A stretch of DNA of 64,000 nucleotides from Vitrella brassicaformis CCMP3155 (GCA_001179505.1 CDMY01000295.1:186001-250000); one strand, 5' to 3'; counted from the first letter of the stretch, positions 9,638 to 49,045 are shown. Numbers and translations are program-made. Notes: generated by a model not told the origin, from the letters alone.

Positions 9638-10170
9638 AGAGAATGGAATCTGATTCGACTTTGTGGACAGGCGAGCCGAGGGTATGAAACCCTGCACACC
9701 GAACCCTGGCATGGGGGCGTCTCGGGGTTGCGGATGTTGTAGCGCGGTCCACGTTTGACGATGTTTTCGTGGACAGACGCATGGAAGGCGACTCTGGAGG
9801 AGGTGACTTGGGCCAGGACAAGAAGCAAGAGAACCGTCGAATCGGCGTCGATGCGTTCTGTGAACTGTGTTTGTTTTCGAAATCGGCCTGCAGCTGGAGA
9901 AAGAATCGGAGAACAGGAAGGCGGACAAAGGAGAGTCGAGGGCCCTCCCCAAAGATCTCACCAAATGGATCAAGGTACTGTATAAGGCAGCATTTCTTGC
10001 CTCCGCGCTTCCAAGGGCGCTTCATTCGTCGCCGCGTGTCGCGACATTCAATTTGCCACGTGAATGCTGCAGGCTCGTGTGGATGCCCCAGCGGAGCACC
10101 TTTCGACGAAGCCAACCATGGCAGGGCCCGCACACGGCGCAGAGCAGGTACCTACGTACCATGCGCGTTC

Positions 10171-41486: not shown

Positions 41487-44240
<2,754 letters not shown>

Positions 44241-44503
44241 CTTGGCTCGAGGCTGCGGCAAAACACGGGGAGGTCCTCAGCAGACGGCGAACACGTGCGG
44301 GACAGCCCGAAAAGCGAGGCGCTTTTATTTGTGGCTGTCGGCACAGTAACGGCCGAAGGCGTTTTTGTCGTCGACGGCTGCAAACACGCCAGGCAGCAAA
44401 GGGAGGCGAAGCAGGCGCTCTCACGACCTTGGCGGCGTGTTCAGAGGAAAGCAAAGCGCTGCTGGAAGCGAGTGGCCGTAAAACGGGGCGCCCTACACAC
44501 AAG

Positions 44504-44656: not shown

Positions 44657-47045
44657 ATGGAAGAGGAGGATAGCTACGACACGTTCGACCCCATCGGCCC
44701 GCTGAGGGACCACCACCCACCCCCCTTATACACCCCTCCCACCCTCGAACCGCCCCTCTTCCCTCCCACTGATGCGTTCGGTCAGGTTCCCGCACCGGCG
44801 GCCTTCATCCCAGCTCCCTATGCGGCCTACGCGGCTCCACAGTCACCCCTGCCGAAGTCGACTGCATCCACAACCGACGGGTCGTCACCCACACAGTCTT
44901 ACTGCTCGGCGCCGTTCCCTCCCATCCCTGAGCAGTCTGCTCATGTGATGGGGTACCCGGTTGGCGGTGCTGGCGGTGGTGGCGCTGTGTCGGCGTCGGC
45001 GCCCGTGTCTGCGTCGTGTGCGTCTGGAGCGAGGAAGGGAGGAGGAGGCTGTGGTGGTGGTGGTGGGGGACAGAAGCGCAAGGCTGATGGTCCGGTGGAC
45101 TGTTCGCATCTGGACAAGAAGGAACAGCAGCGGCTTAGGAACAGGATATCTGCGCAGCAGAGCCGGGACCGCAAGAAGAAGGAGTTTGAGGGGCTCAGCC
45201 TACAGGTGGATACGCTCACAACCGAGAACGCCGACCTTAGGAGGTGGGCGACCGACCACACACGACGCCATGCCACCCTCCCACGCTGTCTGTGTCGGCA
45301 CTCCGTCTCTCTCTCTGTTTCCCCCATTGCAACACACAGAGAGAACGTGGCCCTCCGTGCCGAGAACACCGCCATCGCCGCGCATCGCGACCAGCTGGTC
45401 AGCGAGAACAACACCTTGCGCTCGCGGCTTAGCCATTGGGAGGCGCAGTACACCGACCTCCCCCCGCCCCCGTCCCTACCCCCACTCACCCCACAAGGCA
45501 TCGACGAGGACATGCCGGTGTGTGGCGGGCCGCCGAGCCTCGACAGCCCATCGGACGGGCCGTCGGACAGCGCGTCACTGTGGGACGGGTGGTGGGGCAG
45601 CACCAGTACTGGTGGGTCGCCGTCGAGCGACCGGTCGTCGGCGAGTGGTGCGCGGTTCTATGGGTGGATTGGGGTGCTGGGAGTGCTCATTTTTGGGATC
45701 TGCTTGGTGTCGCTCACTGGAGTGCTCACGGTACGGTGAGGCCACAGCACAGAGGGGAGGGAGGGAGGGATGGCCGAGGGGAGAGAGGGTCTCTCTCTGA
45801 GACTTAACTGTGTGTGGACTGGGCGTTTGTGTGCGCAGCCTATGGGCCCTTCGTATTCGTTCACGAGTGCGCCGATGACGCGCTACACGCCGGGCAGGCT
45901 GCCGTGGTCCAACAACGGCCGCGTGCTCATGTCCCTGCCTGAGCCACCGAACCAGAAGGAACTCATCGTATACGTAAGCTGACTGACCAATCACACCCAC
46001 ACACGTCCCTTTCATCTATCTCATTGTTGGTGTTGCGTTGCAGAACCCGGATGGCCACGCCGTCCAGCTGTGGCAGCAGACAGGTGCGGCAAAGGGCGAC
46101 CCAGCCGTCAATGTCATCGGTGGGGCCTCGGGTGGTGGTGGTCCGGTCCACGACACACGCGAGGAGGCCGAGGAGCTGGTGCGACGGCTGATGCTTGAGT
46201 CGCAGGCGGGGGAGGGCGCCGGGGAGCAGGAACAAGGGGACGGCCACGACGAACCCAGCCACATGCCATACAGGTCAGGCAGGCGGACAGAGAGACAGGG
46301 AGGCAGGCAGGCAGGCAGGCAGGACAGATCCACGGACTCGCGGGAATGCCATTGGCAAAATGGTGCTTGTGTTGTGTTGTGTTTCACCGGGTGCAGGCTT
46401 GTGTGCGTCAACCCGCACTTCGTCATCGGCGACCACAACCTGCACGCCCTCCTCACCGACGGCGGCAAGCCAGCCGCCCCGCCCGCACTCCCCACACCCG
46501 CAGCCCCCTCACCACCCACACACACATCCACATCCACACAGCAAGAGCCAACAGTCGAGGACACCGAAACCACCGAGACCACCACACACACAGCCGCCAA
46601 CACCACCCACCCCCTCCGTCTCCGGGGCACCAACGCCACCAGAGATCATGAGACCATGCTCGACATGCTGGCGCAAAACTCCGTTCTCAAGCACCTCGTC
46701 CCCAACAGCAGCAACATCAAGAACAAGGAGGGGGCTTCGCTGACGAGCAGCAAGCAGTGCGGTCCGCAGCCGCGCGAGAGGGGCAACGACACGAGGGGGC
46801 GCGATAGGGTGGTCGTGGTGGCCAATGGGGACGGGTCGGATCCTTCCAACACGGTGCAGGTCTACGGGGCGCCCAGGAAGCGGACGCACAGCGGTCCCGT
46901 CAACTTCATCGTCACGTTCCCTGGTGACGTGCTGACGTCGGCGGGGCTGCGTCACGTGGACGAGCGGGGCAACGTGGCCATGCTAGCGCCGATGGAGCCC
47001 ATGCATCTGGCGTGCAGCTACCTGGTCAAGCAGAATGGCGACTGA
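44657..47045 (+). CDS. Membrane-tethered bZIP transcription factor (ATF6/CREB3/bZIP28-like architecture), 5 exons
   Basis: Basic region RLRNRISAQQSRDRKK (N-x7-R) and a heptad zipper. Hydrophobic segment FYGWIGVLGVLIFGICLVSLTGVLT (45656-45730). Long C-terminal domain with RVLM and NxS/T sequons. Confidence 0.85.
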
Positions 47046-47931
47046 GGGAGGGAGAAAGGGAGGGAGGGTGGCAAGTCTGCATGTGGGCTGGATTGGATGT
47101 TTGCTGAATGTTTTAACTGTGCGGCCGGGCCGGGCTGTGTTGGTTTCGGTTTTGGCGGGATGGGGGGAGGGATGGGTGCGAGTGGCTGGATGCGATGCCG
47201 TGTATTGTAATTACTTTTTCCGTCCATTGCATTGCCCGAGTGTCCGTGTCGTGTGCGTAAATGCACATCTCACACATGGAGAGGGTCCCTTCCGCGCCCT
47301 CCATGGCGGGCGAACCACACCTCCCTCCCTCCCTGCCTGCCGGTCAGTCAGTCGGTCGATGAGATGCCCACGCCGATTTTTGAGTGCCCACCCGCCTGGC
47401 TCCCTGTCTGCCTGTGGAATGCCTGATGGATGGATGGATTGCCGCACATACGAAGGTATAGTGTGGCGAGAAAGACACACACGTAGACGACACTGCCTCA
47501 GGGAGAGGCGTAGCTGTCTGTAGGTTAGGATGAGATGCAGGCCAGGTGTTTTCATTCATGTGTGGAGACTGTCGCGCGGTGGGTGGGTGGCGCGGTGGCG
47601 TGCTGTTGGTGTGCATGCCTTTGCGTGGTTGTGATTGGAATGGATGGACGGATGGACGATGGACGGATTGGCATCACTCTCTATGTGTCTGTGTGTTGGA
47701 GGGTGTTTTCGTCAAGTGTAATTCATCGTTCAGTCCAGTCTCACACTGGCTGATGGACATATGTATGTGGGATGGAACGATGGATGGATGGATGGATGGG
47801 GTATAGTCGCATTCTCACTCCCCCCATAAGCAAGCAAGCTAGAATGCACACACGAGTACTCACTGTGCAGACCTAAGAGAGAGAGAGGAGGGAGAAAGAG
47901 CGACCGATCTATCCATCGCCCGCTCGCTCCC

Positions 47932-48829
47932 TCATGAGAAAAGAACAGCAAACTCCTGCAGGCAGGCACCAGCAGCACAACACAGCAGAGCAGAGCATAG
48001 AGACGACACGGTGTGCGTGTCGTGGCGGTAGGAGGATGGATGGTGTGTGCGAACAAGATGTGATGTGTGTGCGTACGCTGTAGTCGACTTTCCCGTCCTG
48101 GTTTGTGTCAAGCTCTTTGACCAGCTTGGCGATGTCTATCGTCATGGCGAAGTCGTCCTTCACTATCTTGATCAACTTGTCTGCACAACACGCACGAGAT
48201 ATATACACACACACACACACACGGGAAGTTGACAAACAAAGCGTGATCTGTCTGTCTGCCCTCGGCTCACCGACATCGAGGAGGCCCGACTTGTCGGCCT
48301 CGCCGCCCAACGCTACCCACGCATCCACTGACACACACGCGTACACACACACACACACACAGCCACGACTTAAAGCACAAGCGTCTCACACCGGCCTCCT
48401 CCGTGTCCTTCTTGTTGCGTGCGCACAGCACCAGTGTCCTGTTCGTCCTCGACGTTGCTGGTGGTGGAGCGTTGCTTCTCAAAGGCCTTGAGAAACTCCT
48501 CAAACTCTGCAGATAGGCACACAGATCTCCCCTCCCTCCCCACCCCACACGCACCCACCTATGTACCTATTTGCCCCGTGCCGTCTTCATCGATGTCGTT
48601 CATGAACCGAAACAGCTCCTCCTCGGTCGGGTTCTCGCCTATCGCTGCAGTGCACACACAACACATCCCCCATCCAGTCCATCCTTTGCCCCTCCGGGCC
48701 CCACTCCCAGTCCGACTGACCTTCGAGCAGGAGCTTCATCTCGTCCCTGTCGATGGTGCCCGACCCGTCCGCATCGAACGTCGCAAACGCCTGACGACAC
48801 TTCTCGATGAACACCTCGTCGAGCACCAT
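47932..48829 (-). CDS. LC4: EF-hand protein, outer-arm dynein light chain LC4-like (6 exons)
   Basis: FDADGSGTIDRDEM, ENPTEEELFRFMNDIDEDGTGQI-EFEEF, DTLDAWVALGG..DKSG, DTNQDGKVDYSEF. The DTLDA.VALGG linker is recalled as typical of LC4. Confidence 0.8.
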
Positions 48830-49045
48830 TGCTGTTCCGAGCGTCGAGTTGCGGTGGGCGCGGTGTGTTCGCGGTGAGGGGCGGCTAGAGAGGCTAGGGA
48901 AAGGGCACTGACTGATGTCCTTGGTTTGATTGCAGTCACTCGAAGCGGAAAGGCACAATAGCACGGGACCCGTCCAATCGGATCCTTCAAGGTTCAAGCT
49001 CGCACGGAGGAGAAACAAAGATCTGGCAACAGGAACTGCCGCTCC

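What the first reader, a model, noticed from the sequence alone, without database searches (positions are those of the whole stretch)
44657..47045. ATF6/bZIP28-like membrane-anchored bZIP: a candidate proteolysis-activated ER-stress sensor in an alveolate-like genome
Seen: cytosolic bZIP, then a single Gly-rich TM, then a long C-terminal domain with several NxS/T sequons (NAT, NSS, NDT). An RVL(M) motif lies just after the TM (45920-45931). Known: ATF6, CREB3 and plant bZIP17/28 have this type-II layout and are released by S1P (RxxL/RxL site) and S2P; apicomplexans are generally described as lacking ATF6. Inference: this is a RIP-activated UPR factor. The tail VNFIVTFPGDVL...MHLAC loosely echoes the ATF6 luminal tail (FYVVSFRRDHL...MMQIDC, recalled).
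Basis: partly seen in the sequence, partly recalled or inferred. Interest (0 to 1): 0.8.

Follow-up and report, generated by a model that had tools for sequence, protein, structure and literature searches.

The report
Membrane-anchored bZIP factor in Vitrella
This is a real, expressed gene of the alga Vitrella brassicaformis for a DNA-binding bZIP protein held in a membrane by one helix; it is built like the ER-stress sensors ATF6 and bZIP28 and carries a conserved protease-type motif, but its tail is not detectably related to theirs.

Summary
A five-exon gene (44657-47045, +) encodes a 663-aa protein. It is identical to the database entry CEM00542.1, "BZIP domain-containing protein", Vitrella brassicaformis. 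All four introns and the membrane helix are present in spliced transcript contigs.

The layout is a Pro/Gly-rich N-terminus, a canonical bZIP (NRISAQQSR), a 70-aa linker, one strong Gly-rich helix, and a 337-aa tail.

The claimed homology to ATF6 fails. The tail has no Pfam, PDB or Atlas match and no relative among 1.84 billion representative proteins. The "ATF6 echo" is reached by 10-22% of shuffles.

One thing is new. The basic region RNRISAQQSRDRKK marks a family of protist proteins recovered from metagenomes and one transcriptome. Every complete member has a helix 51-145 residues after the basic region. Ten of 13 carry R-x-L 8-30 residues beyond the helix. The closest member shares GRVLxSLP..LIV with Vitrella.

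Best reading: a membrane-tethered bZIP released by regulated proteolysis, an analogue of ATF6/bZIP28 and not a member. Cleavage, the protease and the stress signal are all inferred.

The scan also noted a different membrane bZIP elsewhere in this genome (s1-227096). I did not test it.

The parts
44657..45243 (+). Exon 1. Encodes the Pro/Gly/Ala-rich N-terminus (aa 1-144), the basic region and the first zipper heptads.
   Evidence: ORF and splice reading; spliced contigs; identical to P0002.
45104..45181 (+). bZIP basic region (aa 150-175) with the DNA-contact signature N-R-I-S-A-Q-Q-S-R.
   Evidence: Pfam bZIP_1 and bZIP_2. Residues 161-172 and K174 are invariant in alignment A1.
45182..45448 (+). 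Leucine zipper of seven heptads (aa 176-232), interrupted by intron 1.
   Evidence: Heptads read from the spliced translation; joint 45243/45340 in X1 and X2.
45244..45339 (+). Intron 1. 96 nt, GT..AG, in frame and free of stops.
   Evidence: Skipped in RNA-like contigs and kept in DNA contigs.
45340..45730 (+). Exon 2. Encodes the rest of the zipper, the Ser/Pro-rich linker and the transmembrane helix.
45659..45730 (+). Single transmembrane helix, aa 303-326. It is Gly-rich, and Pro327 follows directly.
   Evidence: Hydropathy 2.5 over 19 aa; retained in spliced contig X2 record 9.
45731..45838 (+). Intron 2, 108 nt.
   Evidence: Joint in X1 and X2.
45839..45973 (+). Exon 3. Encodes the juxtamembrane part of the C-terminal (inferred luminal) domain.
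45920..45931 (+). R-V-L-M (aa 354-357). A candidate site-1-type cleavage motif, inside the block GRVLMSLPEPPNQKELIV that is shared with P0007.
45974..46043 (+). Intron 3, 70 nt.
   Evidence: Joint in X1 and X2.
46044..46273 (+). Exon 4. Encodes Gly-rich and acidic low-complexity tail segments.
46274..46396 (+). Intron 4. 123 nt, in frame, with a CAGG-type repeat.
   Evidence: X1 record 5 and X2 record 9 run from 46270 straight on to 46394 (table 8). P0001 and P0002 lack it.
46397..47045 (+). Exon 5. Encodes the Thr/Pro-rich stretch, four sequons, the C-terminal beta-like segments and the stop codon.

Best explanation
The gene encodes a type-II membrane-tethered bZIP transcription factor. The N-terminal 300 residues (activation-type low-complexity region, basic region, long zipper) face the cytosol. 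One Gly-rich helix anchors the protein, most likely in the ER. The 337-residue, largely low-complexity tail lies in the lumen. I infer that the factor is dormant while anchored. I infer that it is released by a luminal cut at or near the conserved R-V-L motif, made by a site-1-type protease, followed by an intramembrane cut of the helix-destabilised anchor by S2P or another protease that takes type-II substrates. The bZIP half would then enter the nucleus and bind ACGT-core sites. The layout, its expression, the DNA-binding signature and the family-wide conservation of the helix and of R-x-L are shown here. Topology, cleavage, the proteases and the trigger (ER stress or another signal) are inferred. 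My odds: membrane-tethered bZIP 0.9; activated by proteolytic release 0.6; S1P plus S2P specifically 0.35; ER-stress sensor 0.25-0.3. It works like ATF6/bZIP28 but is not a demonstrable member of either family.
For: The spliced model is confirmed and the helix is kept in cDNA-like contigs. It is identical to P0002. Pfam bZIP is found. The hydropathy peak is strong. There is no N-terminal signal sequence, and a basic residue lies just before the helix in nearly all family members. Relatives P0003-P0008 and L006-L012 share RNRISAQQSRDRKK, and all complete ones have a helix 51-145 residues after the basic region. R-x-L lies 8-30 residues after the helix in 10 of 13 proteins, about 8 of 10 lineages. 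A 30-residue window holds R-x-[LIV] by chance about 0.375 of the time. The block GRVLxSLP..LIV is shared with P0007 (pairwise E 0.01). Helix-breaking or small residues are frequent in the anchors. In bZIP28 a helix-breaking Gly in the anchor is needed for S2P cleavage, RRIL is the S1P site, and BiP binds disordered tail regions (PMC3935173). The NxxSAxxSR signature is that of the ancient ATF6-OASIS/HAC1/plant proto-B cluster (PMC4736632).
Against: No cleavage data exist. S1P and S2P were not located in this genome. R-x-L is a short motif, and in MAFFT alignment A3 the Vitrella/P0007 copy does not fall in the same column as that of the other members. The tail has no detectable homologue and mostly low-complexity composition. 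AlphaFold gave no confident fold, so a sensing domain is not evident. The charge bias around the helix is weak. The linker between zipper and helix is much longer than in the relatives.
Confidence: 0.55

Rival explanations
1. It is a membrane-tethered bZIP released by another route. The luminal R-x-L could be cut by an alveolate aspartyl protease of the plasmepsin V/ASP5 type, with the anchor cut by signal-peptide peptidase or a rhomboid. Alternatively the cytosolic part could be freed by ubiquitin/proteasome-dependent processing. The trigger could be something other than ER stress, such as lipid, salt or light.
For: Four relatives read R-x-L-x-E (RLLSE, RVLSE, RILSE, RQLIE), which is also the PEXEL/TEXEL form; that motif and its proteases are my own knowledge, not tested here. 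At least one relative seems to be a ciliate, so the family may be alveolate. Truncated bZIP28 lacking the S1P site is still processed by S2P (PMC3935173).
Against: Vitrella and P0007 have Ser, not Glu/Gln/Asp, at the fifth position (RVLMS, RVLHS). No protease was examined here.
Confidence: 0.2
2. It is a permanently anchored factor. It acts at the inner nuclear membrane, or it sequesters soluble bZIP partners, and it is never cleaved.
For: The zipper is long (seven heptads) and the linker is 70 residues, which would allow DNA or partner contact while anchored. No sensing fold is recognisable in the tail.
Against: Conservation of R-x-L just beyond the helix and of helix-destabilising residues across distant relatives is hard to explain without processing.
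Confidence: 0.12
3. It is a true but very diverged orthologue of ATF6/OASIS or of plant bZIP17/28, with a tail homologous beyond the reach of sequence methods.
For: It has the same layout and the NxxSAxxSR signature of the ancient ATF6-OASIS/proto-B cluster (PMC4736632). From my memory of the ATF6 C-terminus, not verified, the tails of relatives P0003-P0006 look more ATF6-like than the Vitrella tail does.
Against: A full HMMER scan found no relative of the tail. The echo is reached by 10% (16-mer) and 22% (11-mer) of shuffles. hhalign of the relatives' tail profile against the Vitrella tail gives probability 0.1 and E about 0.5. bZIP trees lack resolving power (PMC4736632).
Confidence: 0.08
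4. It is a bZIP60/XBP1-type factor whose anchor is removed at the mRNA level by IRE1-type unconventional splicing.
For: bZIP60 is also an anchored bZIP with a helix some tens of residues after the zipper (my own knowledge of the family).
Against: No pair of C-N-G-N-N-G-N loops on stems lies near the helix-coding region; there are only two isolated candidates in the whole CDS. There is no Rfam match. Contigs show only the four GT..AG introns. The tail is long, unlike bZIP60.
Confidence: 0.03

Closest known systems
Plant group-B membrane bZIPs (Arabidopsis bZIP28, bZIP17)
   Same: Both have an N-terminal cytosolic bZIP with NxxSAxxSR, a linker of tens of residues, one anchor helix with helix-breaking Gly, and an R-x-(I/L)-type motif in the luminal juxtamembrane region (RRIL in bZIP28). 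Both have a long tail with disordered regions (PMC3935173).
   Different: No sequence similarity of the tail was detected. No paired Lys lies before the helix. It comes from a different eukaryotic supergroup. Processing is untested.
Metazoan ATF6 and the OASIS/CREB3 family
   Same: Both are type-II anchored bZIPs released by S1P then S2P, with a luminal R-x-x-L/R-x-L site about 20 residues beyond the helix and the NxxSAxxSR signature (PMC4736632, PMC5249076).
   Different: The tail is not homologous. Vitrella has Glu, not the family Tyr, at position 27 of the bZIP numbering of PMC4736632. The zipper-to-helix spacing is about 70 residues, much more than I recall for ATF6. The ATF6-specific N-terminal domain was not tested.
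Unnamed protist family with the basic region RNRISAQQSRDRKK
   Same: The basic region is identical over 13 of 14 residues. A zipper, a helix 51-145 residues after the basic region and R-x-L beyond the helix are shared. P0007 also shares GRVLxSLP..LIV and a QKRKAD motif before the bZIP.
   Different: Most members are 280-450 aa and intron-poor. Most have a CxxC...CxxC N-terminal motif and a three-Cys tail domain that Vitrella lacks (hhalign E about 0.5). Vitrella has two extra heptads, a longer linker and a much longer low-complexity tail.
bZIP60 / XBP1 / HAC1 (IRE1-spliced bZIPs)
   Same: All are bZIPs linked to the ER, and bZIP60 has an anchor helix.
   Different: No twin-hairpin splice signal was found. 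The luminal tail here is long.

Membership tests
ATF6 / OASIS-CREB3 (metazoan anchored bZIPs) | bZIP domain with the DNA-contact signature NxxSAxxSR | tested here: met
   The signature reads NRISAQQSR at aa 162-170. Pfam bZIP_1 matches at E 1.1e-11. The signature is described in PMC4736632. It is not specific to this family.
ATF6 / OASIS-CREB3 (metazoan anchored bZIPs) | Tyr at bZIP position 27 (the OASIS/ATF6-type ...RKKxY) | tested here: not met
   Vitrella reads RKKKEF, with Glu at position 27. The relatives P0003-P0008 do have RKK(A/V)Y.
ATF6 / OASIS-CREB3 (metazoan anchored bZIPs) | Single anchor helix C-terminal to the bZIP, with the N-terminus in the cytosol | tested here: inconclusive
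   The helix is clear and is kept in the transcript. Orientation is inferred from the lack of a signal peptide and a weak positive-inside bias. No experiment was done.
ATF6 / OASIS-CREB3 (metazoan anchored bZIPs) | Luminal domain homologous to that of ATF6 | tested here: not met
   phmmer of aa 357-663 against 1.84e9 representatives finds only itself. There is no PDB match. The ATF6 560-575 peptide scores at chance. A profile-profile test against real ATF6 alignments could not be run.
ATF6 / OASIS-CREB3 (metazoan anchored bZIPs) | S1P site (R-x-x-L / R-x-hydrophobic-x) in the luminal juxtamembrane region | tested here: met
   RVLM lies 28 residues after the helix. R-x-L lies 8-30 residues after the helix in 10 of 13 family proteins. 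Only the motif was tested; cleavage was not.
ATF6 / OASIS-CREB3 (metazoan anchored bZIPs) | S2P determinants: helix-destabilising residues in the anchor | tested here: inconclusive
   There are five Gly in the helix, Pro327 directly after it, and Ser/Thr residues. No Asn-Pro pair is present. Composition alone is not proof.
ATF6 / OASIS-CREB3 (metazoan anchored bZIPs) | ER-stress-induced transport to the Golgi and cleavage by S1P and S2P | not testable with these tools
   This needs tagged protein and stress treatment. The genome could not be scanned for S1P or S2P.
Plant group-B bZIPs (bZIP17/28/49) | Tail homologous to the bZIP28 luminal domain | tested here: not met
   No hit of any kind appeared.
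Plant group-B bZIPs (bZIP17/28/49) | Paired Lys on the cytosolic side of the helix (Sar1 binding, Golgi transport) | tested here: not met
   The 15 residues before the helix read SSDRSSASGARFYGW, with no dibasic pair. The feature is described in PMC3935173.
RNRISAQQSR-type anchored bZIPs of protists (defined here) | Invariant basic region R-N-R-I-S-A-Q-Q-S-R-D-R-x-K | tested here: met
   These are invariant columns in A1 and A3.
RNRISAQQSR-type anchored bZIPs of protists (defined here) | Hydrophobic helix downstream of the zipper, followed by R-x-L | tested here: met
RNRISAQQSR-type anchored bZIPs of protists (defined here) | Three-Cys tail domain and N-terminal CxxC...CxxC motif of the main subgroup | tested here: not met
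   hhalign of A2 and A4 against the Vitrella tail gives probability 0.1. The N-terminus lacks the Cys pairs.
bZIP60 / XBP1 / HAC1 | Twin stem-loops with C-N-G-N-N-G-N loops flanking a short unconventional intron | tested here: not met
   script scan of the CDS; Rfam; only GT..AG joints.

The most novel reading that the evidence does not exclude
The RNRISAQQSR proteins are an old family of proteolysis-activated, membrane-anchored bZIP sensors. The family is at least alveolate-wide: a chromerid, a ciliate-like organism and other protists. On this reading Vitrella keeps a copy, and the parasitic apicomplexans, which still have S2P but no bZIPs, lost their copies. The conserved R-x-L (R-x-L-x-E in several members) would be the ancestral kind of substrate for the R-x-L-cutting secretory-pathway proteases that apicomplexans later used for effector export.
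Probability: 0.12. Interest if true: 0.8.

Novelty: new variant of a known kind. Interest (0 to 1): 0.5.

Why it matters
The transcriptional arms of the unfolded-protein response are described as missing in apicomplexan parasites. Plasmodium keeps an S2P protease whose substrates are unknown, and it has no bZIP factors (PMC3084755, PMC5249076). A free-living photosynthetic relative that expresses an anchored bZIP with the hallmarks of a site-1/site-2 substrate gives a concrete candidate for what that machinery acted on before parasitism. The small protist family found here shows the layout is not a one-off. It also illustrates that ATF6-like sensors can share the cytosolic and membrane parts while the luminal part is replaced. 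That bears on whether such tails sense stress through a fold or through chaperone binding to disordered sequence. All functional points still need experiments.

Tried and rejected
- **Tail searches, all blank.** Pfam on every exon piece and on the full protein found only bZIP. The word search with the tail found only the same gene. The full HMMER scan found only itself. The Atlas feature search on the tail and on its last 83 residues gave no usable hit. PDB by sequence for the bZIP part gave Jun-type bZIPs as the best bZIP matches, and for the tail gave nothing.
- **Structure prediction.** AlphaFold on the tail without an alignment gave pLDDT 36. On the relatives' tail with 8 sequences it gave pLDDT 47. 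Neither model is usable, so no fold search was run.
- **First bZIP search.** The word search with the unspliced 360-aa ORF found nothing. It worked only with the full spliced protein.
- **Tail homology within the family.** hhalign of the relatives' tail profiles against the Vitrella tail was at chance. The PDB profile search and Atlas search of the relatives' tail gave nothing.
- **The IRE1-splicing idea was rejected**.
- **Taxon of the relatives.** There are no tRNAs on their contigs. The TSA prefix GILK01 is in no paper. The motif RNRISAQQSR is in no paper.
- **Scan notes.** None mention S2P, M50 or an intramembrane S2P-type protease in this genome.
- **Not possible here.** I could not obtain real ATF6 or bZIP28 sequences through the tools, so no profile-profile test against them was run.

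Full report
**Observation**

The region holds a five-exon gene on the + strand: 44657-45243, 45340-45730, 45839-45973, 46044-46273 and 46397-47045.
- Two introns (96 and 123 nt) are in frame and free of stops, which is why the raw ORFs look continuous.
- Contigs of two RNA-like runs (X1, X2) skip exactly these four GT..AG introns. Contigs of DNA runs (X3, probably the source assembly, and X5) keep them.
- X2 record 9 runs from 45594 through the helix-coding segment into exon 3.
- The 663-aa translation is identical to P0002 = CEM00542.1 / UniRef100_A0A0G4ERN8, "BZIP domain-containing protein", Vitrella brassicaformis CCMP3155.
- The organism is therefore a free-living chromerid alga, a sister of the apicomplexans and not one of them. 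Two earlier notes of this scan name the same species.

**Anatomy**

| Residues | Feature | Basis |
|---|---|---|
| 1-144 | Pro/Gly/Ala-rich low complexity | |
| 150-175 | Canonical basic region; N-R-I-S-A-Q-Q-S-R fits NxxSAxxSR | |
| 176-232 | Seven heptads (L, L, L, L, I, L, L) spanning intron 1 | |
| 233-302 | Ser/Pro-rich linker | |
| 303-326 | The only strongly hydrophobic stretch (19-aa hydropathy 2.5), five Gly; Pro327 follows directly | |
| 327-663 | Tail: short hydrophobic stretches between Gly-rich, acidic and Thr/Pro-rich runs; three Cys; four sequons | |

Pfam bZIP_1 matches at E 1.1e-11.

**The tail is not ATF6-like by any test I could run**
- There is no Pfam family, no PDB sequence match and no usable Atlas hit.
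- The word search returned only the same gene, as a transcript-derived fragment P0001.
- A full HMMER pass over 1.84 billion representatives returned only P0001.
- AlphaFold without an alignment gave pLDDT 36.
- Its best ungapped window in the tail is indeed aa 611-626. However, that score is reached by 506 of 5000 shuffles for the 16-mer, and by 1104 of 5000 for the 11-mer. That is chance level.
- I could not obtain full ATF6 or bZIP28 sequences through the tools, so a profile-profile test remains to be done.

**A family of relatives turned up**
- Searching with the spliced full-length protein over aa 140-375 gave six weak hits, P0003-P0008, of 408-450 aa.
- All six share the basic region RNRISAQQSRDRKK, and all have a strong hydrophobic helix after the zipper.
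- A scan of JGI metagenome contigs for RNRISAQQ gave eight confirmed loci. All seven complete ORFs again show bZIP followed by a helix 51-72 residues after the basic region.
- R-x-L lies 8-30 residues beyond the helix in 10 of 13 proteins: RVLM, RVLH, RQLI, RRLL, RVLS, RILS, RQLT, RQLS, RSLT, RVLS. That is about 8 of 10 lineages.
- A 30-residue window holds R-x-[LIV] by chance about 0.375 of the time.
- The nearest relative is P0007, from a EukProt transcriptome of unknown taxon. It shares GRVLxSLP..K.LIV.N with Vitrella at the same place (pairwise E 0.01 for the tails alone). Its bZIP matches at E 7e-10.
- Caveats apply. The sequences are related, so the counts are not independent. MAFFT does not place all the motifs in one column.
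- Outside the bZIP, the helix and this motif, Vitrella differs from the rest. It lacks their N-terminal CxxC...CxxC and their three-Cys tail domain.
- hhalign of that tail profile against the Vitrella tail is at chance.

**Who the relatives are**
- Their contigs are gene-dense eukaryotic DNA carrying genes for a ubiquitin E1, calpain, a dynein heavy chain and importin-alpha.
- On L004, two in-frame TAGs in importin-alpha lie inside 15-nt GTATTA...TAG elements.
- From my own knowledge, that is the tiny-intron style of heterotrich ciliates such as Stentor, so at least that lineage is probably an alveolate. This is inference.
- Four different family members come from one lake sample at similar G+C, perhaps as paralogues of one organism.

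**Mechanism**
- Shown: an expressed gene, a DNA-binding-competent bZIP signature, one anchor helix, and a conserved R-x-L beyond it.
- Inferred: N-terminus in the cytosol. There is no signal peptide, about 300 residues precede the helix, and a basic residue lies just before the helix in nearly all members.
- Inferred: residence in the ER.
- Inferred: a luminal cut at R-V-L-M by a site-1-type enzyme, whose textbook preference is Arg at P4 and a hydrophobic residue at P2.
- Inferred: an intramembrane cut helped by the Gly-rich helix, as shown for Gly329 of bZIP28 (PMC3935173), followed by nuclear entry.
- The largely disordered tail could hold the protein in the ER through chaperone binding, as proposed for bZIP28 (PMC3935173), but nothing here tests that.
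- An IRE1-type splicing route is disfavoured.
- Other proteases, or no cleavage at all, remain possible.

**Comparison and novelty**
- By layout it works like ATF6/OASIS and plant bZIP17/28.
- By membership it fails the luminal-homology test for both. It also lacks Tyr27 and the paired Lys of bZIP28.
- It does carry the NxxSAxxSR signature that Jindrich and Degnan assign to an ancient ATF6-OASIS/HAC1/proto-B/heterokont cluster (PMC4736632).
- Plant bZIP28 is itself called a functional homologue of ATF6 (PMC3935401). The same wording fits here as a hypothesis.
- I found no paper describing such a protein in alveolates.
- Apicomplexans are reported to lack ATF6, SREBP and bZIPs while keeping S2P (PMC3084755, PMC5249076).
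- The protein itself is already in public databases as an uncharacterised bZIP protein.
- I rate it a new variant of a known kind, of moderate interest.

Noticed in passing
window 43288-44261 (-): An ATP sulfurylase gene (PUA_2 at E 2e-26, ATP-sulfurylase at E 1e-16) is transcribed divergently from the bZIP gene. Only about 400 bp separate the two starts, so they may share a bidirectional promoter.
   Followed up: partly
window 47900-48981 (-); L001:2527-3227: An EF-hand protein gene converges on the bZIP gene. The JGI transcript scaffold L001 joins the two convergent transcripts. It also carries a 10-N scaffold gap plus 3 extra bases at L001:416-428, which made the gene caller split the bZIP protein (hence the 307-aa fragment P0001).
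   Followed up: partly
window 45244-45339 and 46274-46396: Introns 1 and 4 are multiples of three and free of stops. Intron retention would therefore give in-frame insertions of 32 aa (inside the zipper) and 41 aa (in the tail). Intron 4 holds a CAGG-type short repeat that the read tool skipped as repetitive.
   Followed up: partly
L004:8810-8826 and 9716-9732: Two 15-nt GTATTA...TAG elements interrupt an importin-alpha gene on a metagenome contig that carries a family member (P0009/P0003). This looks like the tiny introns of heterotrich ciliates with the standard code.
   Followed up: partly
P0003-P0006 and P0008, N-terminal 60-130 aa: The main subgroup of the family has a conserved CxxC...CxxC pair before the bZIP (possibly zinc binding) and a tail with three invariant Cys. 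Both are absent from the Vitrella protein.
   Followed up: no
L006, L009, L010, L012 (all from sample Ga0247837): Four different family members come from one sample at similar G+C (0.51-0.54). Two have tails of only 41-43 residues that end shortly after an EYRE motif which follows R-x-L. They may be paralogues with long and short luminal tails in one organism.
   Followed up: no
same genome, other windows (notes s1-227096, s1-080125): Other scan notes report a second membrane bZIP with a hairpin (SREBP-like) topology, and GAF-bZIP fusions, in this genome. Vitrella may have several unusual bZIP architectures.
   Followed up: no
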